Shown: one piece after another, positions 1-61,285 of the stretch
Layout: each line of letters begins with the position of its first letter
How positions within the stretch are numbered: the stretch's first letter is position 1
DNA from: Macrostomum lignano
Taxonomy: Eukaryota
Reading direction: 5' to 3'
Length of the DNA stretch: 64,000 bases
Assembly: GCA_002269645.1 (NCBI GenBank)
Contig: NIVC01002684.1
Span: 47,674 to 111,673 of the forward strand
Made by a program: the position numbers and the translations under genes
The notes under the pieces: model-generated
The model's database searches: none
Told to the model about the DNA's origin: nothing
What the model saw: only the letters and a program-made list of their open reading frames with translations

Positions 1-14
1 GTTCGGATACTTAC

Positions 15-110: not shown

Positions 111-336
111 CTGAATTTCCAGTTACAACTGTACCTGACTAAATTTTATCTGCAATGCCTGAAATTAAGTGTCTGAAATTTTCCTGTGTGCAAATACAAT
201 TCGGCACCAATGTCAATGAAAGCTACTTGAACACTGGACTTAAGTTTTTTATTTTCAGTTATCAGCTTTGGCTTGAAAAATATATTAAAATGCTTCTGTT
301 TCACTTGCTACTGAATTGAAAGTGTAGCTGTTTTCC

Positions 337-472
337 ACTAACAGCGTTTAACTACTTGTTTTTCACTAACAGCGTTTAACTACTTGTTTTTCACTAACAG
401 CGTTTAACTACTTGTTTTTCACTAACAGCGTTTAACTACTTGTTTTTCACTAACAGCGTTTAACTATTTGTT
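337..472. repeat. 28-bp tandem repeat (actaacagcgtttaactacttgtttttc), about 5 copies
   Basis: Directly visible tandem units. Confidence 0.9.
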
Positions 473-1112
473 AAATATAAATATAATATACTATTAAATA
501 TAATAACATTCTTTCCCTTTTTGTCAACTAAAATGCACAAAAGAATTGCTACAATTTATTCATTTGAATTAACAGAATCTATCCATACAAGCGAAGCAGT
601 AGATTATGCTGCATTATCCTTTGGAAAACTAAATTAATGTGAAAATCGGCACAATATAGCCGGATACATTTCCAGACTTACGTCCGGATTCAATGTACAT
701 ATCTGGATGTTTCGTCCGGATACAGAACTACAATATCCGAACAAAGCATCTGGATATGTAAAGTTGGCGTCACTTATCCGAAGAAACGACTGGATATTCT
801 CCCACTGAACAGATGCAGAGAATATCCGGCCGAAATTAAAAAAATCCGAACCGAAATCCTGCCCTATTTTCCAGCGGGTGTATTCTTGATAAATATTTTA
901 GCAGCTTGTAGCACATTGCGAGTCTTAAATGAAAATAGTTGCCTTTTTATTTGATTGTGCCTATGGGCTAAATAGAGTAGCGCAGTATGTAAAAATAAAA
1001 GTGGTACCATAGACTAAAAGTCATTAGGCTAGTCACCACAATATTTTTAGTATTTACATAATTTTTAGCAATATAAGTAAATTGTTTTAAAATTGAGACA
1101 TTATTTAAATAG

Positions 1113-1380
1113 ATAATAATAATAATTTGATTATACCTGTCCTAATGAGCAGATATGCAACTGATATTTCAACTATAGCTTTTTGTGTGGCTTATTTGAT
1201 GGTTGCATAGGGCTATTTAATCTAAGAACTAGGGATTGCCATATATACACAGCCTCAATTACTTTAGCTAATGCTAATACTTATGTTATAGCTGAGTGAA
1301 CTGAAGCAATGCAGAGTTGTGTCTTGCTCAAGGATACAACTTGTTTTGAGTAGGTCAAGAATTCAAATAAAATCAACTTT
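1113..1380 (-). mobile_element. Heavily C>T/G>A-mutated copy of the CORE-type SINE
   Basis: Collinear with 11765-12057 and with the reverse complement of 13008-13272. Shares gtgaactgaagcaatgcagagtt, gtgtcttgctcaagga and the (aat)n tail. Confidence 0.8.
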
Positions 1381-1708
1381 TACTCCTCGATACTTATTAT
1401 CAAGATTGACTTTAGAAACAGAATATACTGAAACTGATTAATATTATAGCATAATAAAGCACCAAGTAATCCAATTAGTTAAGAAATTTATATAGATGTA
1501 ATTTGTATGAATATCATATAATCGATTTATTTTTACTGGCAATAAAAAGGCTCAAGCTATCAAGTATAATAAGGAGCCTCATTTTGACAATTATATTTTG
1601 TGAAAAATGAATTTCACAAAGATACAAGTCGGTTAATAAAATCAATAACATGTTCACGATATTGCATGACAAATAATTGACAAGGATAGATAGAAGTCTT
1701 CCATTACA

Positions 1709-2005
1709 ATGTCACCAAAGTCGTGGAATCCGTGGAAGGCGTTTGACATCAGCGAGAAGGAGCGCCAGCTGATTGACAAGAGGCGCCAGATGCGCGAGTT
1801 CTGGGCCCAGGAGTACGTGCGCAAGTCCACCTCGCCACACAGGCCAAACTACAGGCTGGTGTTCGACCCGGCTGTGCAGCGGGCCATCGCTGCCAACGCC
1901 ACCATGGAGAACTTTTTCCGGCCAAACCGAAAGTCAACATTAGCGTTCCTTGGCTCGATTCTCTTCCCTGTGTGCTACGCCCTAAGCTATGACTACTTTT
2001 ATCGG
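1709..2005 (+). CDS. NDUFB4: NADH:ubiquinone oxidoreductase subunit B4 (B15), exon 1
   Basis: MSPKSW...ISEKERQLIDKRRQMREFWAQEY...PHR...VFDPAVQR...FRPN followed by a TM segment matches the NDUFB4 layout. Phase-0 donor gtgagt at 2006. Confidence 0.85.
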
Positions 2006-7448: not shown

Positions 7449-7478
7449 CTGCGGGATGTCAGGTTGAATTTCATGTTC

Positions 7479-8077
7479 CTTCAGGTGTTGTTGCCACCCC
7501 AAACCCATCCTTCAGGTGTTGTTGCCACCCCAAACCCATCCTTCAGGTGTTGTTGCCACCCCAAACCCATCCTTCAGGTGTCTCCGCTACTCCAAACCCA
7601 TCCTTCAGAGGTGTTGTTGCCACCCCAAACCCATCCTTCAGGTGTCTCCGCTACTACAAACCCATCCTTCAGGTGTCTCCGCTACTACAAACCCATCCTT
7701 CAGGTGTCTCCGCTACTACAAACCCATCCTTCAGGTGTCTCCGCTACTCCAAACCCATCCTTCAGGTGTCTCCGCTACTACAAACCCATCCTTCAGGTGT
7801 CTCCGCTACTCCAAACCCATCCTTCAGGTGTCTCCGCTACTACAAACCCATCCTTCAGGTATTGTTGCCACCCCAAACCCATCCTTCAGGTATTGTTGCC
7901 ACCCCAAACCCATCCTTCAGGTATTGTTACCACCCCAAACCCATCCTTCAGGTATTGTTGCCACCCCAAACCCATCCTTCAGGTATTGTTGCCACCCCAA
8001 ACCCATCCTTCAGGTATTGTTGCCACCCCAAACCCATCCTTCAGGTGTGGGATACGCTACCAAACCCATCCTTCAGG
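7479..8077. repeat. 31-bp minisatellite with two unit variants at the 3' end of the GPCR intron
   Basis: aaacccatccttcaggtgttgttgccacccc and aaacccatccttcaggtgtctccgctactac units. Confidence 0.95.
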
Positions 8078-9978: not shown

Positions 9979-11764
9979 TGGCGATTTGTGACAGAGAATG
10001 TTGTTTCAAGCTCAAATTGGTTCCTGAATGCATTTGAGCCGCGGATAAATGAATCTGTTGCTTCATCAACGGTTCGAGTTTAATTTCCTGCTAATCGGAA
10101 GCCGCCAAGATGCATAGGCACTGAAGTGCAGCCGCGACTGGGAACTGGGTGTCTTGGCTGCATCCAGCAGAGGCGGTAGACCCGAAAATTAACAATTAGG
10201 CAAATGGATTTTTCCGTTCCTGTCTAATCAGTTTGGTTTCTGTTGAAACGAAATTGACAAAAACAAAAACATGTTTTTGAGCCGGCCGAGTTCCAGCAAA
10301 ATTGCGCTGATAATAATAAACGTTTTGGTAGGCGGTAATCTGCCTCTCCGGGATCCAGTTTCTCAGTTGCTTATCTCGGTCTTCTCAGATCTGAGAGGGT
10401 GCAGATAGGAACCGAAATCCCTAAAGGCAGCAGAGGGGGGCAGACGGGCAGACAACACAACCCGAGAGCTGTCTTGGTGATGTTGCATCAAGCCGCACTA
10501 AAGCCACATTTCAGATTAATCCCTAGCCGAACGAGGATTTAATCCCAAAAATTTTATCCCTGTGGCTGCAGCTTATCTAAAAAATTCCGCCGTCTCTGTC
10601 TTCACTTATTCTATACGAGTACATGTACAGATGCGTTAGCTAAATCTGTAGCTGTGTACGAGCGTACATTCGGTACAGCTCTGGCACTGCGGTAGTAGCA
10701 AGTTTTGAAACTTCCGACTGCTGCTAACTTCTGCAGATAGCGGGGCTGGGTTCAGGCTGCTGCTGAGCATTTTCTTTTGTATCAATCACAGATTCTACGA
10801 GTATATTGCCTAGATGCATCACCCCAGCATTCGATAATGTAGCTCGAATTTAGCGGCCGTCTCCGAGGCCCCGAAAAAAGGGGGGTCAGGGCCATAGACA
10901 CCAGCTGCAGAAGCTATAGTCTATGGTAAAAACCCCGGGGTTTCGCGCTGTGGTCCTCCAGCTGATGGAGTGGGCCATCTAGGGTTATATAGTAGAATCT
11001 GTGCTATTGATAATTTACTTGATGCGGAGTATTGATTACAGAAGAGCTGAAAAGTACATGTACTGATGTAGCATTTATTTTGTAGATGGCTGGAATAAGA
11101 ATGTAGAGCCAGAGAGTTCTGGAGCACGAAGTGCCCATGTCATAACTGCACATCCGTCGAGTTGAAGATGTTTGAACCCAACTACATGAAGCTCACAATT
11201 TCTTACAAGCTGGAATTCACTATTCCACAATAGCTCAAACCCAATCGCACAAAAAGAGCGGGATCGCGGATCGGATGGATAGAGATTCGATTTTAGACAA
11301 GCTCTATATTTAGGTTCCACCCTCTATTCGCAACGGGCCCGAATCAATAATTCTATCGATCTGCCAGCCCCCCTTGATGACCGCATCGCCCGATCCCTGG
11401 GAATCTGCAGCATGTGACAGCCGCCGCCTCCTTTCTATCCGCATGGGACTCTGTATCGCACTTCACTGTAGGATTGTAGAACATTCGCTTTCAGTCAGTG
11501 CGCCGTTCTTGTGCACACGTTTCAAAACGGCCCCCCTTTCAGAGCCAAAATCGATATTATTTAGCGAACCTGCAATCAACTGAAAAGCGTCTCATAAAGG
11601 TTCAGCTGTGGCTTCAGTCTGCCTGACACTCGGTTTCTAGAGAAAGTTTGGCTGGCTGGAAGATGGCTTGAATACACAGTTAGCGTTAAATGCATCCCTA
11701 TTCATGCATTTTGCAGCAGCATCTCCCTTACCTTTATGGGTCTGTCTGAGTTGAGGTTGAGGCC

Positions 11765-12057
11765 TAATAATAATATAATAATAATAACTGATTACACCTG
11801 CCCCAATTGGGCCTGATGTGCAACCGACAGCTCAGCCGCAGCTATGCGTGGCGCATCTGAAGGCTGCGTACGGCTGTTCAGTCCAAGGACTGGAGGGTCC
11901 CCACGCACCCTCAATTACCCCAGCTAATGCTGGCACCCATTTTACAGCTGGGTGAACTGAAGCAATGCAGAGTTTAAAGTGTCTTGCTCAAGGACACAAA
12001 TTGTTCCGAGTGACCTTGAAGTCGGGAGTCCGACGCTCTGACCACTAGGCTACACCC
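11765..12057 (-). mobile_element. tRNA-derived CORE-type SINE (A box retained, B box deleted)
   Basis: Minus strand reads ggtgtagcctagtggtcagagcg (A box), then gtgtccttgagcaagacact...ttcagttcacccagctgtaaaatggg resembling the MIR CORE domain, then a (tta)n tail. Confidence 0.75.
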
Positions 12058-13007
12058 GTCGAGAGCTAAACAGAGTCGAACCGGCTAAGACGGAGTCGTT
12101 CGCGGATCTCCGTTATAAAACGATCCGAAATGAGATAAGGCAGTTCAGTTGCGTTGCCAAGCCGATTTTGCCCGGATCAGCTTCCGCTGGGCGCCGATAA
12201 CAGAGAGATAAATAATAATAAATCTGCCAACCCGGGCCGGGCCATCTGGCTCCAAGGACAGCTCAGCCAAGGAGACCTTGGATAAGACATCTGGGCTGTC
12301 AGATATTCTCTAGACCCTCAATTTTAGACACTGGGAGGCCGCTAGTTTGAGCAATATATCTCACGAATTTTCTGATAATGCCTCAGTAAAACATTGCGGC
12401 CATTATTGTCTTGATCGATGCATTTTTCGTTCTCCGGTCACATTCGACTCAGCTAGTGATTCGGCCTCCAGAACTGTGCAACCTCTACGTGTCTGACAAT
12501 TGGTGTTTTTGACAGAGTCGCTGCTATTCCAAGTCATCGTTCAAGATGTCCTTGGCACAGCGTCCGGCGTCCTTGTAGCGCCTGGAAATTCTCCATGGTT
12601 GGTTAAGAAGCATCTCTATGAGTATGTTTAGCGAGACCGACCGCAGGGAAGCTTCGAGAAGCACAAAGCAGGCGTTAGAAACCGAATAATGCGGTTCGCG
12701 AATGAGCTTAGCGCCCTGGGCCTTCGGTTCTCTCAATCTACTTATCCTCTGAGCTCATGCACATTGTTTAGTTCATTCCCACACAGGGCGTCGAACTCCA
12801 CAATGGATTCGGCCACATAGCGCGGCCAACCACATTAATTTTCGGGCTCTGTGCGCAGAAATGTGTACGGGCTGTACCATTCCCGTCCACGAGACCCAAC
12901 CTTCAAGGTGCAGAGAGTGTACATGCCTGACGATAGAAAAGCCAGGGCCTCTGTGTGCACCCTGTGAGAGCACACGCTTGCGAGTCGACTCAAAGATCTC
13001 CGACATC

Positions 13008-13272
13008 TTAAAGCGTCTGACTCACGACTTGAAGGTCGGGGGTTCGATTCTCGATCCCATTCGGAACAATTTGTGTTCTTGAGCAAGACACTTAACTCTG
13101 AATTGCTTCAGTTCACCCAGCTGTAAAATGGGTGCCAGCATTAGCTGGAATCATTGAGGGTGCGCGTGGCGACCCCCCAGTCCTTGGACTGAACAGCCGT
13201 ACGCAATAGCTGCGGCTGAGCTGTCGGTTGCACATCTGGCCTAATTGGAGCAGGTGTAATCAATTTATTTTT
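13008..13272 (+). mobile_element. Second CORE-type SINE copy (5'-truncated, B box GGTTCGATTC), inverted relative to 11765-12057
   Basis: High identity to the reverse complement of 11765-12057. B box at 13041-13050. Confidence 0.75.
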
Positions 13273-13936
13273 TAGCCCCGATTTGAAAATGCTTGATTTG
13301 CAGCTGTTTTGCGAAGAGGGTACATGTACATGTAGAGTGGCTTAAATGCGACCAATGGCTTATCCTTCACTGGGCCAATAGATGATCAAGAAGAGACGTC
13401 GGAACTGGCTTCATCACTCGCTAGAGCCTATTCTTCATACGTTGAAGCTTGAACAGCTTGAAGCGTCATTATCGAATTCCATTTTTAAAGTACGCTCGTA
13501 CAGCGTAAGTCTTGGGCTTATTGGATTATATAATAATGAAACTATACGTCAAAGGGTTTTTAAAGGATTACGCATTTGAGCTTGTCTGCTCAGTAGCATA
13601 TTTTCTCCTCGGAAAGTCAGCATTGGGATTAATTATAACCTTTGATTCGTTCCTCCTATTTTAAGGTACGATAGTACAACAAGAAACCCTGGGAATCCGT
13701 GGGAGTGCTGAGTTTAAAGGCGAAAGATCAATTTACGAGCGTATTCTAAGATTGATGTCCTAGTTATTTAATATTTGACACAGTGCACGTATTTTGCATT
13801 CCAGCCAGAATTTTAGGATTTATAGGCGCATTTCCAACCCTGGACTAAACACGGGGTGTAACCATGGGGGACAGGGGGCAGTGCCATATGCAATCGGCTG
13901 GCAAAAGCATATGGCACCCCATGAAGCAGCCTGCCC

Positions 13937-14397
13937 CTGGTGCTGGCGCCCCTGGTGCTGGCGCCCCTGGTGCTAGCGCCCCTGGTGCTGGCGTCCCTGG
14001 TGCTGGCGCCCCTGGTGCTGGCGCCCCTGGTGCTGGCGCCCCTGGTGCTGGCGCCCCTGGTGCTGGCGCCCCTGGTGCTGGCGCCCCTGGTGCTGGCGCC
14101 CCTGGTGCTGGCGCCCCTGGTGCTGGCGCCCCTGGTGCTGGCGCCCCTGGTGCTGGCGCCCCTGGTGCTGGCGCCCCTGGTGCTGGCGCCCCTGGTGCTG
14201 GCGCCCCTGGTGCTGGCGCCCCTGGTGCTGGCGCCCCTGGTGCTGGCGCCCCTGGTGCTGGCGCCCCTGGTGCTGGCGCCCCTGGTGCTGGCGCCCCTGG
14301 TGCTGGCGCCCCTGGTGCTGGCGCCCCTGGTGCTGGCGCCCCTGGTGCTGGCGCCCCTGGTGCTGGCGCCCCTGGTGCTGGCGCCCCTGGTGCTGGC
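13937..14397. repeat. 15-bp near-perfect tandem repeat (cctggtgctggcgcc), about 30 copies, in the GPCR intron
   Basis: Directly visible. Confidence 0.95.
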
Positions 14398-14888: not shown

Positions 14889-15769
14889 TTCTTGTCAAGG
14901 ATTCCACAGATTCATCGCCCTCTCACCTGTCCAGTGCAGCTAATCCAAGTGCTTCCTTCTCTTCGTTACCTTCTACTGTCTCGGCCTTCTTTTCCTATCC
15001 GCTCCAGGCGTGCTGAGCCGGCCTGAATTGGTGGCAGCCCAAAGAAGAAGCAGAAAGCAGAAATTAAATGCAGCAGCGGCTCTGCCAGCGCCTGATTGGC
15101 TGCGAGCGAATTGAACCCAACCTCAACCCGATGCACTTCGTTCAGTCATTGAATTATTCATTTCTCCACCTTTGCCTCTCTCTCTCTCCCTCTCTGCTAA
15201 GCCCAGCCGACTTTCCAGAATGCATCGTAGCGACCAGGCAGGTGGGCTTGCACTGGCCGTATCCTGATGATTTCTGAAGGTTCTGAGTAAACTTTTATAG
15301 CAAATTTGAGATTCCACTTTCAAATCCGTGATTTGAAATCAACCAGTTTTTGTCTGGATAAATACAGATAAATACAGCAGTTGAATTTCCACTCCAGTTG
15401 TGCCAATTAAAGGAATATCAATGGCAATTTCTCAAGCACATATTCACGCCTCTCGCTGGCCAGGTGTTGAGAGTCTTCCAGCCTATTTCTGTCCGCAACC
15501 TGCACCTTCCACTCAATTCTGATTCTCTACTCTTCCTGCCTGATTTCTCCTACTGCAGCCCCCGATTCATCCTGGCTCAGAGCGCGGCATCAGGCTGTGC
15601 TTGTGAGCTGAGCCGTTAGAGTGCGAGAGGCAAAGTCGCGTGACTTTGCGGAAGTTTTTATGCGTTCTAAAACTTGCTTAGCACTCAATTCTAGTGAAAT
15701 ACGAGTAGTTTTCCATATATTGTCTACTACTTACAGTTACCTGTATATAGGACACCCCTACTGTATCCG

Positions 15770-16998
15770 CTTGCAGGACACTCAAGACCGATTGCAGGAC
15801 ACTCAAGACCGATTGTAGGACACTCAAGACCGGTTGCAGGACACTCAAGACCGATTGCAGGACAATAAAGACCGATTGCAGGACACTCAAGACCGATTGC
15901 AGGACACTCAAGACCGATTGCAGGACACTCAAGACCGATTGCAGGACACTCAAGACCGATTGCAGGACACTCAAGACCGATTGCAGGACACTCAATACCG
16001 ATTGCAGGACACTCAAGACCGATTGCAGGACACTCAAGACCGATTGAAGGACACCCATGCTGTATCAGATTGCAGGACACTCAAGACCGATTGCAGGACA
16101 CTCAAGACCGATTGCAGGACACTCAAGACCGATTGCAGGACACTCAAGACCGATTGCAGGACACTCAAGACCGATTGCAGGACACTCAAGACCGATTGCA
16201 GGACACTCAAGACCGATTGCAGGACACTCAAGACCGATTGCAGGACACTCAAGACCGATTGCAGGACAATAAAGACCGATTGCAGGACACTCAAGACCGA
16301 TTGCAGGACACTCATGCTGTATCAGATTGCAGGACACTCAAGACCGATTGCAGGACACTCATGCTGTATCAGATTGCAGGACACTCAAGACCGATTGCAG
16401 GACACTCAAGACCGATTGCAGGACACTCAAGACCGATTGCAGGACACTCAAGACCGATTGCAGGACACTCAATACCGATTGCAGGACACTCAAGACCGAT
16501 TGCAGGACACTCAAGACCGATTGAAGGACACCCATGCTGTATCAGATTGCAGGACACTCAAGACCGATTGCAAGACACTCAAGACCGATTGCAGGACACT
16601 CAAGACCGATTGCAGGACACTCAAGACCGATTGCAGGACACTCAAGACCGATTGCAAGACACTCAAGACCGATTGCAGGACACTCAAGACCGATTGCAGG
16701 ACACTCAAGACCACTCAAGACCGATTGCAGGACACTCAAGACCGATTGCAGGACACTCAAGACCGATTGCAGGACACTCAAGACCGATTGCAGGACACTC
16801 AAGACCACTCAAGACCGATTGCAGGACACTCAAGACCGATTGCAGGACACTCAAGACCGATTGCAGGACACTCAAGACCACTCAAGACCGATTGCAGGAC
16901 ACTCAAGACCGATTGCAGGACACTCAAGACCACTCAAGACCGATTGCAGGACACTCAAGACCGATTGCAGGACACTCAAGACCGATTGCAAGACACAG
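15770..16998. repeat. 21-bp minisatellite (gattgcaggacactcaagacc) with periodic interruptions
   Basis: Directly visible. Confidence 0.95.
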
Positions 16999-18719: not shown

Positions 18720-20010
18720 TTCTAATCTCTCACGATTTCTAATCTTATGATTTCTAATCTCACGATTCCTAACCGCACGATTTCCAATCTCACGATTTCC
18801 AATCTCACGATTTCTAATCTCATGATTTCTAATCTTCCGATTTCTAATCTCATGATTTCCAATATCACGATTTCCAATCTCACGATTTCCAATCTCACGA
18901 TTTCCAATCTCACGATTTCCAATCTCACGATTTCCAATCTCACGATTTCCAATCTCACGATTTCCAATCTCACGATTTCCAATCTCACGATTTCCAATCT
19001 CACGATTTCCAATCTCACGATTTCCAATCTCACGATTTCCAATCTCACGATTTCCAATCTCACGATTTCCAATCTCACGATTTCCAATCTCACGATTTCC
19101 AATCTCACGATTTCCAATCTCACGATTTCCAATCTCACGATTTCCAATCTCACGATTTCCAATCTCACGATTTCCAATCTCACGATTTCCAATCTCACGA
19201 TTTCCAATCTCACGATTTCCAATCTCACGATTTCCAATCTCACGATTTCCAATCTCACGATTTCCAATCTCACGATTTCCAATCTCACGATTTCCAATCT
19301 CACGATTTCCAATCTCACGATTTCCAATCTCACGATTTCCAATCTCACGATTTCCAATCTCACGATTTCCAATCTCACGATTTCTACTCTCACGATTTCT
19401 AATCTCACGATTTCTAATCTCACGATTTCTAATCTCACGATTTCTAATCTCACGATTTCTAATCTCACGATTTCTAATCTCACGATTTCTCATCTCAAGA
19501 TTTCTAATCTCATGATTTCCAATCTTCCGATTTCTAATATCATGATTTCCAATATCACGATTTCTAATCTCTCGATTTCTCATCTTCCGATTTCAAACTT
19601 CCGACTTCAAATCTCCCGATTTATAATTCCACGATTTGTAATCTTCCGATTTCTGATCTTCTAATTTTAAATCTCAAGATTTCTATTCTCACGATTTCTA
19701 ATCTCACGATTTCTAATCTCACGATTTCTAATCTCACGATTTCTAATCTCACGATTTCTAATCTCACGATTTCTAATCTCACGATTTCTAATCTCACGAT
19801 TTCTAATCTCACGATTTCTAATCTCACGATTTCTAATCTCACGATTTCTAATCTCACGATTTCTAATCTCACGATTTCTAATCTCACGATTTCTAATCTC
19901 ACGATTTCTAATCTCACGATTTCTAATCTCACGATTTCTAATCTCACGATTTCTAATCTCACGATTTCTAATCTCATGATTTCCAATCTTATGATTTCTA
20001 ATCTCATGAT
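18720..20010. repeat. 15-bp minisatellite (atttccaatctcacg / atttctaatctcacg)
   Basis: Directly visible, with two homogenised blocks (cc versus ct variant). Confidence 0.95.
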
Positions 20011-20385
20011 TTTAAGTTTCGTAGACTTTTTCACAATGAATTTATTGCAAAATCAAAATATCTTATTTCAAACCTTAATATTCATCTCGCTACTAGCATT
20101 AGTAGTGTCATGAGGAGAGCGCCGGTGTGCGCAATAAAACTAAAGATTTGAGGCTTCTGCGACACGACGCTTCGGAATTTTTTCTCTTGTTTGCCAGGAA
20201 TCTGCGACGCAAGCGTGTAAAGTCAGGAGTATGTGCAAAAATTCTTATTGAAGTCTGCAATCGGATTAAGGAGGCGCTTTGAAGGACCCAGCGCACTGGC
20301 CTGGCTAATCCCATGTTAATCTGTTTTGAAAGCCGTCTGCTTGAGCCGATTTCCTCCCAAACAGAGCATTTCCTTTGGTGCTCTT

Positions 20386-21502: not shown

Positions 21503-23260
21503 GCTGGACTCCAAACTAACTACATTTACAGCAAGCTGGACTCCAAACTGACTACATTTACAGCAAGCTGGACTTCAAACTGACTACATTTACAGCAAGC
21601 TGGACTCCAAACTGACTACATTTACAGCAAGCTGGAATCCAAACTGACTACATTTACAGCAAGCTGGACTTCAAACTGACTACATTTACAGCAAGCTGGA
21701 ATCCAAACTGACTACATTTACAGCAAGCTGGACTTCAAACTGACTACATTTACAGCAAGCTGGAATCCAAACTGACTACATTTACAGCAAGCTGGACTCC
21801 AAACTGACTACATTTACAGCAAGCTGGAATCCAAACTGACTACATTTACAGCAAGCTGGACTCCAAACTGACTACATTTACAGCAAGCTGGAATCCAAAC
21901 TGACTACATTTACAGCAAGCTGGACTTCAAACTGACTACATTTACAGCAAGCTGGACTCCAAACTGACTACATTTACAGCAAGCTGGAATCCAAACTGAC
22001 TACATTTACAGCAAGCTGGAATCCAAACTGACTACATTTACAGCAAGCTGGAATCCAAACTGACTACATTTACAGCAAGCTGGACTCCAAACTGACTACA
22101 TTTACAGCAAGCTGGAGTTCAAACTGACTACATTTACAGCAAGCTGGAGTTCAAACTGACTACATTTACAGCAAGCTGGAATCCAAACTGACTACATTTA
22201 CAGCAAGCTGGAATCCAAACTGACTACATTTACAGCAAGCTGGAATCCAAACTTACTACATTTACAGCAAGCTGGACTTCAAACTGACTACATTTACAGC
22301 AAGCTGGACTCCAAACTGACTACATTTACAGCAAGCTGGACTTCAAACTGACTACATTTACAGCAAGCTGGACTTCAAACTGACTACATTTACAGCAAGC
22401 TGGAATCCAAACTGACTACATTTACAGCAAGCTGGAATCCAAACTGACTACATTTACAGCAAGCTGGAATCCAAACTGACTACATTTACAGCAAGCTGGA
22501 CTTCAAACTGACTACATTTACAGCAAGCTGGACTCCAAACTGACTACATTTACAGCAAGCTGGACTCCAAACTGACTACATTTACAGCAAGCTGGACTTC
22601 AAACTGACTACATTTACAGCAAGCTGGAATCCAAACTGACTACATTTACAGCAAGCTGGAATCCAAACTGACTACATTTACAGCAAGCTGGAATCCAAAC
22701 TGACTACATTTACAGCAAGCTGGAGTCCAAACTGACTACATTTACAGCAAGCTGGAGTCCAAACTGACTACATTTACAGCAAGCTGGAATCCAAACTGAC
22801 TACATTTACAGCAAGCTGGACTTCAAACTGACTACATTTACAGCAAGCTGGAATCCAAACTGACTACATTTACAGCAAGCTGGAATCCAAACTTACTACA
22901 TTTACAGCAAGCTGGAGTCCAAACTGACTACATTTACAGCAAGCTGGAATCCAAACTGACTACATTTACAGCAAGCTGGAATCCAAACTGACTACATTTA
23001 CAGCAAGCTGGAATCCAAACTGACTACATTTACAGCAAGCTGGAATCCAAACTTACTACATTTACAGCAAGCTGGAATCCAAACTGACTACATTTACAGC
23101 AAGCTGGAGTCCAAACTGACTACATTTACAGCAAGCTGGAATCCAAACTGACTACATTTACAGCAAGCTGGAATCCAAACTGACTACATTTACAGCAAGC
23201 TGGAATCCAAACTGACTACATTTACAGCAAGCTGGAATCCAAACTGACTACATTTACAGC
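21503..23260. repeat. 32-bp minisatellite (ggaatccaaactgactacatttacagcaagct), about 55 copies
   Basis: Directly visible. Variation is almost confined to the gga-N-t-Y-c positions. Confidence 0.97.
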
Positions 23261-33633: not shown

Positions 33634-36350
33634 TGTCATGAGTGGCTCATGAGTGCCTTATATCTGTCATGAGTAGCTCATATCTGTCAAGAGTGGCTCA
33701 TGAGTGGCTCATATATGTCATGAGTGGCTCATGAGTGGCTCATATATGTCATGAGTGGCTCATGAGTCGCTCATATCTGTCATGAGTGGCTCATGAGTGG
33801 CTCATATCTGTCATGAGTGGCTCATGAGTGGCTCATATCTGTCATGAGTGGCTTATATCTGTCATGAGTGGCTCATATCTGTCACGAGTGGCTCATATCT
33901 GTCACGAGTGGCTTATATCTGTCACGAGTGGCTCATATCTGTCACGATATCTGTCATATCTATAATAATGGCTAAAATATACGTCATCTCTGTCATGAGT
34001 GGCTCATATCTGTCATCTCTGTCATGAGTAGCTCATATCTGTCATGAGTGGCTCATATATGTCACGAGTGGCTCATGAGTGGCCCATATCTGTCATGAGT
34101 GGCTCATATCTGTCATGAGTGGCTCATATCTGTCATGAGTGGCTCATATCTGTCATGAGTGGCTCATATCTGTAATGAATGGCTCATATCTATCACGAGT
34201 GGCTGATATCTGTCATGAGTGGCTCATATCTGTCATGAGTGGCTCATGAGTGGCTCATATCTGTCATGAGTGGCTCATATCTGTCATGAGTGGCTCATGA
34301 GTGGCTCATATCTGTCATGAGTGGCTCATATCTGTCATGAGTGGCTCATATCTGTCATGAGTGGCTCATATCTGTCATGAGTGGCTCATATCTGTCATCT
34401 CTGTCATGAGTAGCTCATATCTGTCATGAGTGGCTCATATATGTCACGAGTGGCTCATGAGTGGCCCATATCTGTCATGAGTGGCTCATATATGTCACGA
34501 GTGGCTCATGAGTGGCCCATATCTGTCATGAGTGGCTCATATCTGTCATGAGTGGCTCATATCTGTCATGAGTGGCTCATATCTGTAATGAATGGCTCAT
34601 ATCTATCACGAGTGGCTGATATCTGTCATGAGTGGTTCATATCTGTAATGAGTGGCTCATATCTGTCATGAGTGGCTCATATCTGTCATGAGTGGCTTAT
34701 ATCTGTCATGAGTGGCTCATATCTGTCACGAGTGGCTCATATCTGTCACGAGTGGCTTATATCTGTCACGAGTGGCTCATATCTGTCACGATATCTGTCA
34801 TATCTATAATAATGGCTAAAATATACGTCATCTCTGTCATGAGTGGCTCATATCTGTCATCTCTGTCATGAGTAGCTCATATCTGTCATGAGTGGCTCAT
34901 ATATGTCACGAGTGGCTCATGAGTGGCCCATATCTGTCATGAGTGGCTCATATCTGTCATGAGTGGCTCATATCTGTCATGAGTGGCTCATATCTGTCAT
35001 GAGTGGCTCATATCTGTAATGAATGGCTCATATCTATCACGAGTGGCTGATATCTGTCATGAGTGGCTCATATCTGTCATGAGTGGCTCATGAGTGGCTC
35101 ATATCTGTCATGAGTGGCTCATATCTGTCATGAGTGGCTCATGAGTGGCTCATATCTGTCATGAGTGGCTCATATCTGTCATGAGTGGCTCATATCTGTC
35201 ATGAGTGGCTCATATCTGTCATGAGTGGCTCATATCTGTCATCTCTGTCATGAGTAGCTCATATCTGTCATGAGTGGCTCATATATGTCACGAGTGGCTC
35301 ATGAGTGGCCCATATCTGTCATGAGTGGCTCATATATGTCACGAGTGGCTCATGAGTGGCCCATATCTGTCATGAGTGGCTCATATCTGTCATGAGTGGC
35401 TCATATCTGTCATGAGTGGCTCATATCTGTAATGAATGGCTCATATCTATCACGAGTGGCTGATATCTGTCATGAGTGGTTCATATCTGTAATGAGTGGC
35501 TCATATCTGTCATGAGTGGCTCATATCTGTCATGAGTGGCTCATGAGTGGCTCATATCTGTCATGAGTGGCTCATATCTGTCATGAGTGGCTCATATCTG
35601 TCATGAGTGGCTCATATCTGTCATGAGTGGCTCATATCTGTCATTAGTGGCTCATATCTGTCATGAGTGGCTCATATATGTCACGAGTGGCTCATGAGTG
35701 GCCCATATCTGTCATGAGTGGCTCATATATGTCACGAGTGGCTCATGAGTGGCCCATATCTGTCATGAGTGGCTCATATCTGTCATGAGTGGCTCATATC
35801 TGTCATGAGTGGCTCATATATGTCACGAGTGGCTCATGAGTGGCCCATATCTGTCATGAGTGGCTCATATATGTCACGAGTGGCTCATGAGTGGCCCATA
35901 TCTGTCATGAGTGGCTCATATCTGTCATGAGTGGCTCATATCTGTCATGAGTGGCTCATATCTGTAATGAATGGCTCATATCTATCACGAGTGGCTGATA
36001 TCTGTCATGAGTGGCTCATATCTGTCATGAGTGGCTCATATCTGTCATGAGTGGCTCATATCTGTCACGAGTGGCTCATATCTGTCACGAGTGGCTCATA
36101 TCTGTCACGAGTGGCTCATATCTGTCACGAGTGGCTCATATCTGTCATGAGTGGCTCATATCTGTCACGAGTGGCTCATATCTGTCATGAGTGGCTCATA
36201 TCTGTCACGAGTGGCTCATATCTGTCACGAGTGGCTCATATCTGTCATGAGTGGCTCATATCTGTCACGAGTGGCTCATATCTGTCACGAGTGGCTCATA
36301 TCTGTCACGAGTGGCTCATATCTGTCATGAGTGGCTCATATCTATCATGA
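33634..36350. repeat. 20-bp minisatellite (catgagtggctcatatctgt) with an 844-bp higher-order duplication
   Basis: The unique insert tataataatggctaaaatatacg occurs at 33961 and 34805. Confidence 0.95.
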
Positions 36351-36784
36351 GCTTGCTTCTTTTAGCTATGTCATTTTTTTGTACTAAAATTTCGGCTCCA
36401 GTCCAGATGCCAAACCCCAGTTGTCCTTGTGTGGATAATAAAGTTAAAGCTTTTTTACATTGGCTTTAATCAGAATTGTCCAATGGTAGATGATTTTTTC
36501 AGGATGCCAGATATACTGCCGCAGCCCCAGCATCTAATTGCATTTTATTGCATTTGACTGTGCTCGGGGGGGGGGACCACCGGATTCGCGCCAGTATTGG
36601 CCCATTACTATTTTATCTGGCTGAGAGGTCTGTGGTAGTTCGTACAAGAACTCGTGCAAATTCAATTTCCAATGTAATGGACGGAAGGGTGCCGCATGCT
36701 GGTGGCGGAGGGGAGCTGCCAAGAGGGGAGAAAGGCAGGAGAGGTGAATGAACGTGTGCCATGAAGTATGAGCTAGAGCGGAGT

Positions 36785-41083: not shown

Positions 41084-41690
41084 CGGAGTTGAAAAAGCCA
41101 CACAGGAAATTCCCCGTCGCACCAAATGCACTACTCAGTGAGTAGAAGGCCTGGCTAGAAGGAGAATAATTTGTAATTTTAGTTAGGAAATCACTTATTC
41201 ATCAAGAGTAATTATGAAACTATTATTTAAAAAAAACTGGAGTACACTTTACTGATAGAAAACTCATAAGTGTTTCATTAATACAGTTTACTTATAATTG
41301 ACCAAACAAGAGCACAGCTCACAGCTGACTGACCTTGTCAATTAAAAACTATTTTAAAGATTTAAAAAGACAATTAAAATTTGCATTGCAATCCATAGTA
41401 TACAAAAAACAACAAAATTACAAAACGAGACAATTACAAAGCAGTCAATCAGCAGGAATATAACTAAGCTAGAATATTTATCAAAAAGCGATCAGATTAC
41501 TTGAATATAACTACAAAGCAAGATTATTGCAAGTTGAGAATTTTTCTGAGTAACTGTCTACTTTTAAGTAGTAGGCCTCTTAAATGGCACGCAAGTTTAG
41601 ACAACTATTGTATATAATGACAATATCCGCTAGCGATTATTCAATAATTAACATCAACCTCTATAACTCTATAACCTCTATAATGATTGG

Positions 41691-42920
41691 GGTGCACACC
41701 GAGTGACACATTCCTATTCTATGAACAGGGATTGGGTGTACACCGAGTGACACATTCCTATTCTATGAACAGGGATTGGGTGTACATCGAGTGACACATT
41801 CCTATTCTATGAACAGGGATTGGGGTGTACATCGAGTGACACATTCCTATTCTATGAACAGGGATTGGGGTGTACATCGAGTGACACATTCCTATTCTAT
41901 GAACAGGGATTGGGGTGTACACCGAGTGACACATTCCTATTCTATGAACAGGGATTGGGGTGTACATCGAGTGACACATTCCTATTCTATGAACAGGGAT
42001 TGGGGTGTACACCGAGTGACAAATTCCTATTCTATGAACAGGGATTGGGGTGTACATCGAGTGACACATTCCTATTCTATGAACAGGGATTGGGGTGTAC
42101 ATCGAGTGACACATTCCTATTCTATGAACAGGGATTGGGGTGTACATCGAGTGACACATTCCTATTCTATGAACAGGGATTGGGGTGTACATCGAGTGAC
42201 ACATTCCTATTCTATGAACAGGGATTGGGGTGTACATCGAGTGACACATTCCTATTCTATGAACAGGGATTGGGGTGTACACCGAGTGACACATTCCTAT
42301 TCTATGAACAGGGATTGGGGTGTACATCGAGTGACACATTCCTATTCTATGAACAGGGATTGGGGTGTACACCGAGTGACAAATTCCTATTCTATGAACA
42401 GGGATTGGGGTGTACATCGAGTGACACATTCCTATTCTATGAACAGGGATTGGGTGTACATCGAGTGACACATTCCTATTCTATGAACAGGGATTGGGGT
42501 GTACATCGAGTGACACATTCCTATTCTATGAACAGGGATTGGGGTGTACATCGAGTGACACATTCCTATTCTATGAACAGGGATTGGGGTGTACATCGAG
42601 TGACACATTCCTATTCTATGAACAGGGATTGGGGTGTACATCGAGTGACACATTCCTATTCTATGAACAGGGATTGGGGTGTACACCGAGTGACACATTC
42701 CTATTCTATGAACAGGGATTGGGTGTACATCGAGTGACACATTCCTATTCTATTAACAGGGATTGGGTGTACACCGAGTGACACATTCCTATTCTATGAA
42801 CAAGGATTGGGTGTACATCGAGTGACACATTCCTACTCTATGAACAGGGATTGGGGTGTACATCGAGTGACACATTCCTATTCTATGAACAGGGATTGAG
42901 TGTACATCGAGTGACACATC
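41691..42920. repeat. 45-bp minisatellite, about 27 copies
   Basis: gagtgacacattcctattctatgaacagggattggggtgtacatc units. Confidence 0.97.
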
Positions 42921-43301
42921 CCGATTCTATTCCGAGAGAAACTTGAATGATAGTTTCACAGCAAAAGTAAGGACTAAACCGATAAACTCACACGTTTCGT
43001 TGCAAATTATTGTCATTAACTAGTCAGTAAATTGTCCTAGGCAGCAAAATTCGAGTCAATGAAAGAAAGAGTTGGATTTGGAAGAAAGTATTCAACACTG
43101 CAGATAAGAGCACTCATCAACAGCGGAAGGAACAGTTTTACACGCAATAAAAATTCAAAACTGCTAATCGCAACGGGATAATCAGAATGTGAGCAAAGCA
43201 TAAATCAATCAATACTACTATTCGTAAAAGTAGTAATGTAACTAACGTTTTTATAGAACACAAATACCAAAATAACTAAATGGGCCACTCAGGCATAAGT
43301 A

Positions 43302-45203: not shown

Positions 45204-46414
45204 AGTCAGACAATATGAACAAACCTGACACTGACACAGTGCCTGTCAGACAGTATGAACAAACCTGACACTGACACAGTGCCTGTCAGACAATACAAGC
45301 AAACCTGACACTGACACAGTGCCTGTCAGACAGTATGAACAAACCTGACACTGACACAGTGCCTGTCAGATAATATGAACAAACCTGACACTGACACAGT
45401 GCCTGTCAGACAGTATGAACAAACCTGACACTGACACAGTGCCTGTCAGACAATATGAACAAACCTGACACTGACACAGTGCCTGTCAGACAGTATGAAC
45501 AAACCTGACACTGACACAGTGCCTGTCAGACAGTATGAACAAACCTGACACTGACACAGTGCCTGTCAGACAATGAAAGCAAACCTGACACTGAAATAGT
45601 GCCTGTCAGACAATGAAAGCAAACCTGACACAGACACAGTGCCTGTCAGACAATATGAACAAACCTGACACTGACACAGTGCCTGTCAGACAGTATGAAC
45701 AAACCTGACACTGACACAGTGCCTGTCAGACAGTATGAGCAAACCTGACACTGACACAGTGCCTGTCAGACAGTATGAGCAAACCTGACACTGACACAGT
45801 GCCTGTCAGACAGTATGAGCAAACCTGACACTGACACAGTGCCTGTCAGACAGTATGAACAAACCTGACACTGACACAGTGCCTGTCAGACAATATGAAC
45901 AAACCTGACACTGACACAGTGCCTGTCAGACAGTATGAGCAAACCTGACACTGACACAGTGCCTGTCAGACAGTATGAACAAACCTGACACTGACACAGT
46001 GCCTGTCAGACAGTATGAGCAAACCTGACACTGACACAGTGCCTGTCAGACAGTATGAGCAAACCTGACACTGACACAGTGCCTGTCAGACAGTATGAAC
46101 AAACCTGACACTGACACAGTGCCTGTCAGACAATATGAACAAACCTGACACTGACACAGTGCCTGTCAGACAGTATGAGCAAACCTGACACTGACACAGT
46201 GCCTGTAAGACAGTATGAACAAACCTGACACTGACACAGTGCCTGTCAGACAATGAAAGCAAACCTGACACTGAAAGAGTGCCTGTCAGACAATGAAAGC
46301 AAACCTGACACAGACACAGTGCCTGTCAGACAATATGAACAAACCTGACACAGACACAGTGCCTGTCAGACAATATGAACAAACCTGACACTGACACAGT
46401 GCCTGTCAGACAAT
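45204..46414. repeat. 40-bp minisatellite, about 30 copies, in ARP2 intron 2
   Basis: aaacctgacactgacacagtgcctgtcagacagtatgaac units. Confidence 0.97.
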
Positions 46415-46750: not shown

Positions 46751-46989
46751 CTGTGAGGTGTTGTTGTGTTTAACGATTACAATCAAACTGTGTATGCAGT
46801 TTAAAGCATTGCTCTTATTATAGGAATATCAGGGCTAGTGGGATAGATCCTGGGATAGTGGGAATCCTTGGGATTTGGAAATCTAATTAATATTGGGAGA
46901 ATTCTCTGATATATACTGTGTATGCAGTATATTGGGGTGTGATGGGAGAATTCTGGGATTGGGGAATATTGGGATTTGGGAGTCCAGGG

Positions 46990-47475
46990 ATTAGGGAATC
47001 CGGGATTGGGGAATCCAAGGATTGGGGAATCCAAGGATTGGGGAATCCAGGGATTGGGGAATCCAAGGATTCAGGAATCCAGGGATTGGGGAATCCTGGG
47101 ATTGGGGAATCCTGGGATTGGGGAATCCTGGGATTGGGGAATCCTGGGATTGGGGAATCCTGGGATTGGGGAATCCTGGGATTGGGGAATCCTGGGATTG
47201 GGGAATCCTGGGATTGGGGAATCCTGGGATTGGGGAATCCTGGGATTGGGGAATCCTGGGATTGGGGAATCCTGGGATTGGGGAATCCTGGGATTGGGGA
47301 ATCCTGGGATTGGGGAATCCTGGGATTGGGGAATCCTGGGATTGGGGAATCCTGGGATTGGGGAATCCTGGGATTGGGGAATCCTGGGATTGGGGAATCC
47401 TGGGATTGGGGAATCCTGGGATTGGGGAATCCTGGGATTGGGGAATCCTGGGATTGGGGAATCCTGGGATTGGGA
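46990..47475. repeat. 16-bp G-rich minisatellite (ctgggattggggaatc) in ARP2 intron 1
   Basis: Directly visible. Confidence 0.95.
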
Positions 47476-47560
47476 GAATCGTCTGAGAGCGGTATGGCTC
47501 CAAGGAGCCGTTACTCCCACCGTTTGGGAGTATCCGTTTGAATGAACCAATATAGCCTAC

Positions 47561-48007
47561 CTGAGCGTAAAGAGTCAGGACAGCTTGAATCGCAACGTAC
47601 ACGCCAGAAAAGTTGTACTTTTCAAACATGGCTTCAATCATTCGCTCGCGATTCTTAGCCGGATTCATCGGCGGCTCAGTCAGGAGGATCTTTGTGTTCT
47701 GACAGTCTAAGTTCATCTTTTTCGACCCGAACGTGTAATCATAAAGGTGGAGCATGTCTGTCCAGTTGCTCACAATGCCATTCTCCATTGGATAATTAAC
47801 TTGTAGCATTTGGCGAACCTCGGCCGCCTCGTCACCAATCATGAGGTCGCGAACTTCAACGTCGCCAATGCGAGAGCTGCTTCTTAGAATCGGCCGGCCG
47901 ACTAGCGAGGGGAAAATGTGCTCGGGGTAGTTGGCCCCGGCCCGGCCGCACTTCACAAATCCTGTGCCATTGTCGCACACAACCACATGGCGGCCCTTGC
48001 TGTCCAT
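47561..48007 (-). CDS. ACTR2: Actin-related protein 2, exon 1
   Basis: [21 protein letters not shown]...LLTEPPMNP...[11 protein letters not shown]|gtaggc. The four exons total 395 aa, ARP2 length. Confidence 0.96.
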
Positions 48008-53611: not shown

Positions 53612-53740
53612 TCACCACCAGGATCTGAAGACGTCTCCCATAGCTAATATGATGAAGATAGTAATAGCCATTGCTATGCAGGTTATAATAGCAATGAATA
53701 TCTGGAATTTGGTCTCGCAGCAGCACTTTATCCAAGCCAT
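53612..53740 (-). CDS. Candidate 42-aa single-TM micropeptide
   Basis: MAWIKCCCETKFQIFIAIITCIAMAITIFIILAMGDVFRSWW*; TATA-like cataaaaag about 70 nt upstream. No homology recognised. Confidence 0.4.
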   Translation of the reverse strand: MAWIKCCCETKFQIFIAIITCIAMAITIFIILAMGDVFRSWW

Positions 53741-60789: not shown

Positions 60790-61285
60790 TAATCTCACTT
60801 ATGACCTCACTTATGACCTCACTTATGACCTCACTCACGACCTCACTCATGACCTAAGTTATGAACTCACTCATGACCTCACTTATGACCTCACTCATGA
60901 CCTCACTTATGACCTCACTCACGACCTCACTCATGACCTAAGTTATGAACTCACTCATGACCTCACTCACGACCTCACTCATGACCTCACTCATGACCTC
61001 ACTTATGGCCTCACTTATGACCTCACTCATAACCTCACTCACAACCTCACTCATGACCTCACTTATGACCTCACTAATGAACTTACTTTTGACCTCACTA
61101 ATGACATCACTCATGACTTCAATAACGACCTCACTTATGACCTCACTAACGACCTCACTTATGACCTCACTTATGACCTCACTTATGACCTCAATAATGA
61201 ACTTACTTTTGACCTCACTAACGACTTCACTCATTAACTCACTCATGATCTCGTTCATGAGCTCACTCATGAACTCACTCACCCA
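60790..61285. repeat. 12-bp minisatellite (ctcactcatgac / ctcacttatgac), iGluR intron 3
   Basis: Directly visible. Confidence 0.93.

What the first reader, a model, noticed from the sequence alone, without database searches (positions are those of the whole stretch)
1113..1380. RIP-like, unidirectional C>T/G>A hypermutation of one SINE copy, including non-CpG sites
Seen: this copy was aligned by hand (about 1127-1351) to the two intact copies at 11765-12057 and 13008-13272. It shows about 43 C>T/G>A changes, about 7 transversions and no T>C/A>G changes. Examples: cacgcgcac>catatatac, ggcacccat>aatacttat, ccccag>ctttag, gccgcag>actatag. Only about 11 of the 43 are at CpG; many are CpA/TpG>TpA. 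Established: CpA>TpA-biased mass transitions are the signature of fungal repeat-induced point mutation (RID/DIM-2 dependent), whereas ordinary animal 5mC decay is CpG-limited. Inference: a locus-restricted (not family-wide) cytosine methylation or deamination process acts on repeats in this animal genome, potentially an undescribed genome-defence system.
Basis: partly seen in the sequence, partly recalled or inferred. Interest (0 to 1): 0.85.

Follow-up and report, generated by a model that had tools for sequence, protein, structure and literature searches.

The report
Heavily C-to-T decayed SINE fossil
One old copy of a short retroposon just upstream of an NDUFB4 gene has lost about a third of its G:C pairs to one-way C-to-T changes on both strands. 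The pattern is real and stronger than background, but it is a single copy, it fails the tests for fungal-type repeat-induced mutation, and in-place cytosine-deamination decay explains most of it.

Summary
Against the majority of two intact copies in the window and one outside copy, copy A (1113-1412) has 41 C>T/G>A changes, 0 T>C/A>G and 12 transversions over 219 sites. It keeps none of the 7-8 CpGs, and its GC is 36% against 51-54%. This exceeds a normal AT-biased spectrum (p~4e-5) and differs from rare variants in the window's minisatellites (19 C>T: 20 T>C).

The RIP-like, locus-restricted defence reading is not supported:
- The RIP substrate index is unchanged (1.59 vs 1.55-1.65).
- An inverted SINE pair and dozens of tandem arrays nearby are not C>T-mutated.
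- The three "intact" copies show the same direction bias at low dose (11:1).
- Copy A also carries more transversions and indels, so it is older.

APOBEC-type editing also fails: hits on the two strands are interleaved (20 runs, 20.0 expected).

Two things remain unexplained. Hits prefer 5'-[A/C]-C-[A/G] (20/27 vs 21/94), and a 38-nt core (1296-1333) has no substitutions.

Best reading (about 0.5): in-place deamination decay of an old, once-methylated SINE in AT-rich DNA upstream of a promoter. A copy-specific enzymatic hypermutation cannot be excluded (about 0.2). With one copy, genome-wide data are needed.

The parts
1113..1412 (-). SINE copy A, a full-length but dead fossil. Parts: (AAT)n tail 1113-1126, body 1127-1356, B-box remnant 1357-1368, tRNA-like head remnant to ~1412. 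It is the sequence with 41 C>T/G>A, 0 reverse transitions and 12 transversions.
   Evidence: blastn; nhmmer envelope 1092-1440; 4-way alignment; head alignment; landmarks
1296..1333 (-). A 38-nt central stretch of copy A with no substitution relative to the family consensus. It carries only a 2-4 nt deletion. It corresponds to the most conserved block of the SINE body.
   Evidence: A run of 38 or more identical sites has P~4.5e-4. 0 of 18 G/C sites are hit, against 6.0-6.8 expected from sequence context. No protecting hairpin.
11757..12070 (-). SINE copy B, near-intact reference copy (GC 54%, 8 CpG). Its head has a deletion over the B-box.
12983..13294 (+). SINE copy C, near-intact reference copy, 5'-truncated, with a 19-20 bp internal deletion. 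It is inverted relative to B, about 0.9 kb away.
982..1700 (.). AT-rich block (24-35% GC per 100 bp) around copy A. It is CpG-free from 982 to 1522 except at position 1388.
1709..2005 (+). First coding exon of an NDUFB4 (complex I B15 subunit) gene, CpG-rich. Copy A lies about 300-600 bp upstream of its ATG.
   Evidence: Pfam PF07225, E 5.9e-9; sequence and GT donor read

Best explanation
Copy A is an old, dead copy of a tRNA-derived SINE that decayed where it sits. After insertion it lost Pol III promoter function.

Its cytosines, including 5-methylcytosines at all its CpGs, were then converted to thymine by deamination on either strand over a long period. This pulled a 52-54% GC insert towards the 24-28% GC of the surrounding DNA upstream of the NDUFB4 promoter.

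The process is not triggered by repetition and is not peculiar to this locus in kind. The same one-way spectrum is visible at low dose in the other copies. Copy A shows more of it because it is older. It may also show more because of where it sits: a once-methylated element in open, transcription-proximal, AT-rich DNA where transient single-strandedness speeds deamination.

Shown: the direction, density and both-strand interleaving of the changes; total CpG loss; greater age; AT-rich setting; failure of the RIP and APOBEC criteria. Inferred: the chemical route (deamination), past methylation, and any role of the promoter-proximal position.
For: - One-way spectrum on both strands, randomly interleaved: 20 runs against 20.0 expected.
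- All CpGs gone. P~0.006 if CpG cytosines decayed no faster than the others.
- (CpA+TpG)/(ApC+GpT) stays at 1.59, so there is no RIP-type CpA/TpG depletion.
- Copy A has 12 transversions (5.5%), against 2, 2 and about 6 private ones in B, C and D. It also has several indels and a barely alignable head.
- Copy C has the same proportions at one-sixth the dose: 6 C>T/G>A, 0 reverse, 2 transversions.
- B, C and D together give 11:1 in the same direction, 9 of the 11 outside CpG.
- Flanking 100-bp bins are 24-28% GC.
- No repeat-dependent C>T bias elsewhere in the window.
Against: - The bias is stronger than a stationary process matching the flanks would give (p~1e-4; it would imply an equilibrium GC of about 13% or less).
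- C>T per transversion is about 3 times that of the sibling copies (41:12 vs 11:10, p 0.049) and about 6 times that of minisatellite variants (p 8e-6).
- Hits are strongly context dependent: 5'-[A/C]-C-[A/G] 20/27 against 21/94 (p 1.4e-6; 0 of 300 permutations). The background C>T variants (4/47 vs 15/178) and the siblings (2 of 11) do not share this.
- A 38-nt core is untouched.
- The hot motif is not visibly depleted in the immediate flanks (not significant).
- Plain spontaneous decay predicts none of these.
Confidence: 0.5

Rival explanations
1. Copy-specific enzymatic hypermutation. A DNA cytosine deaminase (AID/APOBEC-like), or a DNMT-coupled deamination following element-targeted methylation that spills over to CpA, hit this retroposon copy on both strands in one or a few episodes, on top of ordinary ageing.
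For: - Strong trinucleotide preference. CCA is hit 9/11, ACA 6/9, CCG 3/4 and ACG 2/3, against ACC 0/7, CCT 0/5 and TCA 1/8.
- The preference is the same on both strands and is absent from background C>T variants.
- Excess of C>T per transversion.
- Zero reverse transitions.
- Hot-motif depletion is seen in A (13/84) but not in the flanks (24/103).
- All CpGs lost, and CpG and CpA are the most-hit 3' contexts.
Against: - There is one copy only.
- No strand bias (26/62 vs 15/59, p 0.08) and no strand-coordinated clusters. These define APOBEC editing of retroelements (PMC4866542). That survey found no such editing in 19 invertebrate genomes.
- The neighbouring copies B and C are untouched.
- CpC sites are hit at 30%, too high for DNMT3-type CpA spillover.
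- The motif was found post hoc in 121 sites.
- No deaminase or methyltransferase gene could be examined.
Confidence: 0.2
2. RIP-like, homology-dependent genome defence, as in fungi: duplicated DNA is recognised and its cytosines are mutated to thymine on both strands.
For: The phenomenology overlaps. The changes are one-way C>T on both strands, 34% of G:C pairs are hit, TpA triples, TpA/ApT is 1.08, and CpA is the most-hit dinucleotide (19/42).
Against: - The substrate index is unchanged (1.59; RIP <1.03), and the composite index is negative.
- TpA/ApT is just as high in unique AT-rich DNA of the window (0.88-1.01), so it does not discriminate.
- The inverted pair B/C is intact.
- Long, 93-99% identical tandem arrays (for example 21503-23260, 41685-42930, 45205-46412) show 19 C>T: 20 T>C.
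- The window is metazoan, with rhodopsin-type GPCRs, an ANF-receptor exon and a tRNA-SINE. No RID-type enzyme is known there (own knowledge).
Confidence: 0.04
3. Polarity or subfamily artefact. Copy A derives from an older, AT-richer sister subfamily that shares the conserved central domain, so many 'C>T' differences are not changes that happened in copy A.
For: - The central 38 nt are identical while the flanks differ. Families that share only a conserved central domain show this pattern (PMC4824008).
- Only three reference copies were available.
- Five of the 11 private C>T states in C and D coincide with A's state.
Against: - Forty-one differences all in one direction would require an equally one-way GC-enriching history in the master lineage.
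- Copy A's A- and B-box regions are ruined by the same kind of change, which cannot have been present in a transcribed source.
- A shares the 19-bp segment and the overall colinearity with B and D.
- A's composition matches its flanks, which is expected for in-place decay.
Confidence: 0.08
4. Fixation bias or selection rather than mutation. AT-favouring fixation in promoter-proximal, nucleosome-poor DNA drove GC>AT substitutions and rejected AT>GC ones, while the 38-nt core was retained because it was co-opted as a cis-regulatory element of the NDUFB4 gene.
For: - Copy A lies 300-600 bp upstream of the NDUFB4 ATG, in 24-28% GC DNA.
- The core is protected against substitution (P~4e-4).
- There are no reverse transitions.
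Against: - Transversions show no AT bias: 3 GC>AT against 3 AT>GC.
- The trinucleotide context dependence points to a mutational cause, not a selective one.
- The core carries a 2-4 nt deletion.
- No conservation or functional data are available.
Confidence: 0.08

Closest known systems
Deamination-driven decay of retroposon copies in animals (CpG decay of methylated Alu/SINE copies plus general GC>AT mutation bias)
   Same: A dead SINE copy has lost all CpGs. TpG/CpA are not depleted. It has drifted from 52-54% to 36% GC in AT-rich surroundings, with transversions and indels that mark age.
   Different: Thirty-three of the 41 transitions lie outside CpG. There is no reverse transition at all, the context preference is strong ([A/C]-C-[A/G]), and a core is untouched. 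The bias exceeds what the flanks' composition implies.
Fungal repeat-induced point mutation (RIP; RID/DIM-2 dependent)
   Same: One-way C>T on both strands at high density, with TpA gain; CpA is the most-hit dinucleotide.
   Different: No fall of (CpA+TpG)/(ApC+GpT). Other repeats in the window are spared. CpG and CpC are hit nearly as much as CpA. The genome is metazoan.
AID/APOBEC DNA editing of retroelements in vertebrates (Knisbacher and Levanon 2016, PMC4866542)
   Same: Dense, unidirectional C-deamination footprint confined (as far as can be seen) to one retroelement copy. A 5'-CC preference with 3' A recalls the APOBEC3G-type CCCA hotspot (own knowledge).
   Different: That editing is strand-biased (G>A on the sense strand) and clustered. 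Here both strands are hit, and the hits are interleaved at random. It was reported absent from 19 invertebrate genomes (PMC4866542).
SINE superfamilies with a highly conserved central domain (CORE, V, Deu, Meta; PMC4824008, PMC11481361)
   Same: tRNA-like head followed by a strongly conserved central block and a simple-repeat (TTA)n tail. The conserved block is the part that survives in copy A.
   Different: Membership of a named superfamily was not tested, because no consensus library was available. Conservation in those families refers to master or consensus sequences, not to a single decayed copy.

Membership tests
Fungal-type RIP | Unidirectional C>T on both strands at high density | tested here: met
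   41 C>T/G>A against 0 reverse; 26 on one strand and 15 on the other, interleaved
Fungal-type RIP | CpA>TpA preference that lowers (CpA+TpG)/(ApC+GpT) below about 1.03 and raises TpA/ApT above about 0.89 | tested here: not met
   The substrate index is 1.59 in A, against 1.55-1.65 in B, C and D. TpA/ApT is 1.08, but it is 0.88-1.01 in unique AT-rich DNA too.
Fungal-type RIP | Dependence on duplication: other sufficiently long and similar repeats are mutated too | tested here: not met
   The B/C inverted pair is intact. Tandem arrays of 0.5-1.8 kb give 19 C>T: 20 T>C.
Fungal-type RIP | RID/DIM-2-type cytosine methyltransferase homologue in the genome | not testable with these tools
   Only 64 kb of the genome is available, and the source genome is not in the searchable collections.
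AID/APOBEC editing of retroelements | Strand bias: G>A on the element's sense strand, with C>T as control | tested here: not met
   Sense G>A 26/62 against C>T 15/59, p 0.08. Criterion from PMC4866542.
AID/APOBEC editing of retroelements | Strand-coordinated clusters of edits | tested here: not met
   20 runs of strand labels, 20.0 expected
AID/APOBEC editing of retroelements | Enzyme-type sequence motif at edited cytosines | tested here: inconclusive
   5'-[A/C]-C-[A/G] is hit 20/27 against 21/94. This is partly CC-type, but AC is also hot and TC is cold. The motif was found post hoc in one copy.
5mCpG deamination decay | Loss of CpG without loss of TpG/CpA | tested here: met
   0 CpG against 7-8. 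CpA+TpG 35 against 38-45. CpG o/e 0.13.
5mCpG deamination decay | Transitions essentially limited to CpG | tested here: not met
   Only 8 of the 41 are at consensus CpG sites.
tRNA-derived SINE | tRNA-like head with A and B boxes | tested here: inconclusive
   TAGCCTAGTGG and GGTTCGATTCC are read in copy D and partly in B and C. ARAGORN and Rfam call no tRNA.
tRNA-derived SINE | Dispersed multi-copy element of about 300 bp with a simple-repeat 3' tail | tested here: met
   Three copies in the window and one on an unrelated contig; (TTA)n tails
tRNA-derived SINE | Target-site duplications | tested here: not met
   No convincing direct repeats flank A, B or C. This is uninformative about age, since the young copies lack them too.
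ADAR hyper-editing carried into a retrocopy | A>G changes on the sense strand of the derived copy | tested here: not met
   The differences are of both kinds (26 G/A, 15 C/T), and polarity is GC>AT.

The most novel reading that the evidence does not exclude
An invertebrate genome has a DNA-level cytosine-deamination process, either deaminase-based or coupled to element-targeted methylation. It hypermutates individual retroposon copies on both strands with a 5'-[A/C]-C-[A/G] preference. It would be neither repeat-induced like RIP nor strand-biased like APOBEC editing. Copy A would be its first visible footprint.
Probability: 0.15. Interest if true: 0.75.

Novelty: new member of a known kind. 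Interest (0 to 1): 0.33.

Why it matters
If copy A is only an old fossil, it is a routine example of how GC-rich retroposons melt into AT-rich DNA, and the RIP analogy should be dropped.

If the context-specific, both-strand excess turns out to recur in other copies, it would be different. It would point to mutational silencing of mobile elements in an invertebrate by a route unlike both fungal RIP and vertebrate APOBEC editing. That question is open, because a survey of 19 invertebrate genomes found no editing footprint (PMC4866542).

The untouched 38-nt core upstream of a housekeeping gene is also a small, testable candidate for a SINE-derived regulatory element.

Tried and rejected
Getting more copies, to build a real consensus and an age series, mostly failed:
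- Exact-pattern scans found nothing in metagenome contigs or viral contigs. In genome contigs the only hit was a chance match in Bacillus.
- A peptide from a SINE reading frame found a single outside copy.
- Exact look-up of a window GPCR ORF found no source contig.
- An ARP2-like exon gave only 72-74% matches, so the organism stays unidentified.
- Literature searches for the sample accession and for SINE sequence strings found nothing.

Within the window:
- No further copies were found by blastn, nhmmer or a purine/pyrimidine-collapsed search designed to find transition-saturated copies.
- The target-site duplication test, meant to separate mutation at insertion from mutation in place, was uninformative. 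Even the young copies lack recognisable duplications.
- A hairpin protecting the core was rejected (z 0.77).
- CHG-type (CAG/CTG) specificity was rejected (CAG 8/16, CTG 4/16).
- No second mariner copy exists for comparison.
- No coding remnant was found in the + frames of the CpG-free block at 48-50.8 kb.
- Rfam and tRNA scans were empty.

An assembly or read-damage artefact was considered and set aside. The changes are confined to about 300 bp and are accompanied by indels.

Full report
**What is there.** The window contains three copies of a ~300-bp tRNA-derived SINE.
- Copy A lies at about 1113-1412, with its sense strand on the minus strand.
- Copy B lies at 11757-12070 (minus).
- Copy C lies at 12983-13294 (plus). 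It is 5'-truncated and has an internal 19-20 bp deletion.

No further copy was found by nhmmer, or by a purine/pyrimidine-collapsed BLAST meant to catch transition-saturated relatives. A peptide from one reading frame of copy B found one outside copy, D, on an 861-bp ENA metagenome contig (L001). D is full length. It has a tRNA-like head (TAGCCTAGTGG..., GGTTCGATTCC), the same body and a (TTA)n-type tail.

**Checking the observation.** At the 189 aligned sites where B and C agree, copy A differs by 34 C>T/G>A, 0 T>C/A>G and 10 transversions. Against the majority of B, C and D over 219 unambiguous sites, the counts are 41, 0 and 12.
- Eight of the 41 are at consensus CpG sites and 19 at CpA sites.
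- Copy A keeps none of the 7-8 CpGs of the intact copies.
- Its GC is 36% against 51-54%, and TpA rises from 7-10 to 26.

The GC-rich state is ancestral for two reasons. Three copies carry it, one of them from another data set. And copy A's B-box region (AAGAATTCAAAT, 1357-1368) and head are degraded versions of promoter elements that a transcribed source must have had intact.

**Is it more than chance or ordinary bias?** Yes.
- With 121 G/C and 98 A/T sites and a typical animal per-site bias of about 3:1, roughly one transition in five should be AT>GC. Zero of 41 has p~4e-5.
- Suppose the process were the stationary one that holds the flanks at about 26% GC. Then 3 or fewer AT>GC events among 47 GC-content-changing substitutions has p~1e-4. 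The data would imply an equilibrium GC of about 13% or less.
- As an internal baseline I polarised rare variants (frequency 20% or less) in 19 minisatellite arrays of the same window. They give 19 C>T against 20 T>C, with 36 transversions. This differs from copy A at p 2e-8.

This baseline is imperfect, because array variants are subject to conversion. It does show that AT>GC transitions are common in this genome, and that repeated DNA as such is not C>T-mutated.

**Is it locus-restricted hypermutation of a peer copy?** Only partly.
- Private transitions in B, C and D are 11 C>T/G>A to 1 T>C. Nine of the 11 are outside CpG. The direction bias is therefore a property of how this family changes, not of this locus.
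- Copy A is also older. It has 12 transversions (5.5%), against 2, 2 and about 6 for the others, several indels, and a head that aligns only with gaps.
- Copy C has the same proportions at one-sixth the dose (6:0:2).
- Even so, copy A has about three times more C>T per transversion than the three siblings pooled (41:12 vs 11:10, p 0.049). It has about six times more than the minisatellite variants (p 8e-6).

**Tests of named mechanisms.**

*RIP.*
- The product index TpA/ApT is 1.08. It is 0.88-1.01 in unique AT-rich DNA of the window, so it does not discriminate.
- The substrate index (CpA+TpG)/(ApC+GpT) is 1.59 in A and 1.55-1.65 in the intact copies. It is nowhere near the <1.03 of RIPed DNA.
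- The 3' context is only mildly skewed: CpA 19/42, CpG 8/18, CpC 9/30, CpT 5/29 (chi-square p 0.07).
- The inverted pair B/C is intact. So are long, 93-99% identical tandem arrays.
- RIP-like, repeat-induced mutation is therefore contradicted inside the window itself.

*APOBEC-type editing of retroelements.* This is defined by sense-strand G>A bias and clustering (PMC4866542).
- Here G>A is 26/62 and C>T is 15/59 (p 0.08).
- The strand labels of the 41 hits form 20 runs, where 20.0 are expected.
- The hits are fully interleaved, as expected for a process acting on duplex DNA in place.

*CpG-only decay.* All CpGs are gone (P~0.006 if they decayed no faster than other cytosines). But 33 of the 41 hits lie elsewhere.

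*ADAR-type editing.* Ruled out by direction, and by both complementary types being present.

**What remains unexplained.**
1. The hits depend strongly on trinucleotide context.
   - 5'-[A/C]-C-[A/G] is hit 20/27, against 21/94 elsewhere (Fisher p 1.4e-6). None of 300 label permutations reached this, even when allowed to choose the best partition.
   - CCA is hit 9/11 and ACA 6/9, whereas ACC is 0/7, CCT 0/5 and TCA 1/8.
   - The preference is the same on both strands.
   - It is absent from the minisatellite C>T variants (4/47 vs 15/178) and from the siblings' private changes (2 of 11).
2. A 38-nt stretch (1296-1333), the most conserved block of the SINE body, has no substitution.
   - Such a run has P~4.5e-4.
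   - 0 of 18 G/C sites are hit, against 6.0-6.8 expected from context.
   - It does carry a 2-4 nt deletion relative to B, C and D. That argues against a recent conversion patch from such copies.
   - No hairpin accounts for the protection.
3. The hot motif is depleted in A (13/84 G/C sites, 0.61 of expectation) but not in the immediate flanks (24/103, 0.95). The difference is not significant.

**Setting.** Copy A lies in an AT-rich block. The flanking 100-bp bins are 24-28% GC, and the block has no CpG from 982 to 1522 except at 1388. It sits 300-600 bp upstream of the ATG of a CpG-rich first exon of an NDUFB4 gene (1709-2005; Pfam PF07225). At a larger scale the flanks keep a normal CpG content (o/e 0.86-0.87). 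Elsewhere the window is a mosaic. The 2.2-kb block 48400-50600 has 3 CpGs where about 60 are expected. Other AT-rich blocks keep o/e of about 0.9-1.0. CpG-free, TpA-rich, AT-rich patches are therefore not unique to the SINE.

**Conclusion.** The most economical account is in-place decay of an old, once-methylated SINE copy by cytosine and 5-methylcytosine deamination on both strands, in AT-rich promoter-upstream DNA. I give it about 0.5. It explains the direction, the CpG loss, the interleaving, the age markers and the family-wide bias. It does not predict the strength of the bias, the motif or the spared core.

| Alternative | Confidence |
|---|---|
| Copy-specific enzymatic or methylation-coupled hypermutation | about 0.2 |
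| Older AT-rich subfamily (polarity error) | about 0.08 |
| AT-favouring fixation with a co-opted core | about 0.08 |
| RIP-like, homology-dependent process | about 0.04 |

Everything rests on one copy and three references. The organism could not be identified and its genome could not be reached. The decisive analysis is therefore a genome-wide plot of C>T load and context against transversion age for the whole family.

Noticed in passing
window 48400-50600: A 2.2-kb AT-rich, TpA-rich block has only 3 CpGs where about 60 are expected (o/e about 0.05). It lies between the 5' end of an ARP2-like exon and a mariner element. Other AT-rich blocks (1-981, 52000-54000) keep CpG o/e of 0.85-1.0, so CpG depletion is mosaic. 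No Pfam domain was found in the + frames; the minus frames were not scanned.
   Followed up: partly
window 50860-51963 (minus): An intact 367-aa mariner-type transposase ORF (Pfam Transposase_1, E 1e-18). There is no second copy in the window.
   Followed up: partly
window 11757-12070 and 12983-13294: SINE copies B and C form an inverted pair about 0.9 kb apart and 85% identical. They could form a long hairpin or double-stranded RNA, yet both are almost unmutated.
   Followed up: partly
window 1296-1333: The one part of the decayed SINE that has no substitution lies about 375-410 bp upstream of the NDUFB4 start codon. It is a candidate co-opted regulatory element.
   Followed up: partly
whole window, e.g. 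7477-8077, 13933-14397, 15767-16996, 18728-20012, 21503-23260, 33647-36351, 41685-42930, 45205-46412: Minisatellites are unusually dense: more than 40 arrays with 11-102 bp units in 64 kb. They account for most of the swings in GC content and GC skew. Some run into open reading frames, such as the 12-bp array 60794-61281 inside an ANF-receptor-like ORF.
   Followed up: partly
window 46991-48007 (minus): An ARP2-like N-terminal region is encoded in one large exon and is only 72-74% identical to any ARP2 in the protein collection. It may be a divergent paralogue or retrogene. A 16-bp minisatellite (46943-47480) lies within the downstream part of the same open frame, about 80 nt past the end of the ARP2-like part.
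   Followed up: no
window 329-472: A 28-bp x5 tandem repeat, 98% identical, keeps its CpG in all five units. It lies 650 bp from the CpG-free SINE copy.
   Followed up: no
window 1-10 and 640-880: A cluster of TCCGGAT(A)/ATCCGAA motifs in both orientations, CpG-rich within AT-rich DNA. It may be the subterminal repeats of an unrecognised DNA transposon or MITE.
   Followed up: no
L001 (ENA ERZ28655790, scaffold_137897) 245-560: The only outside copy of the SINE sits on a contig labelled as metagenome, so that assembly probably contains animal host DNA. The sample could hint at the host species, but the accession was not found in the literature library.
   Followed up: partly
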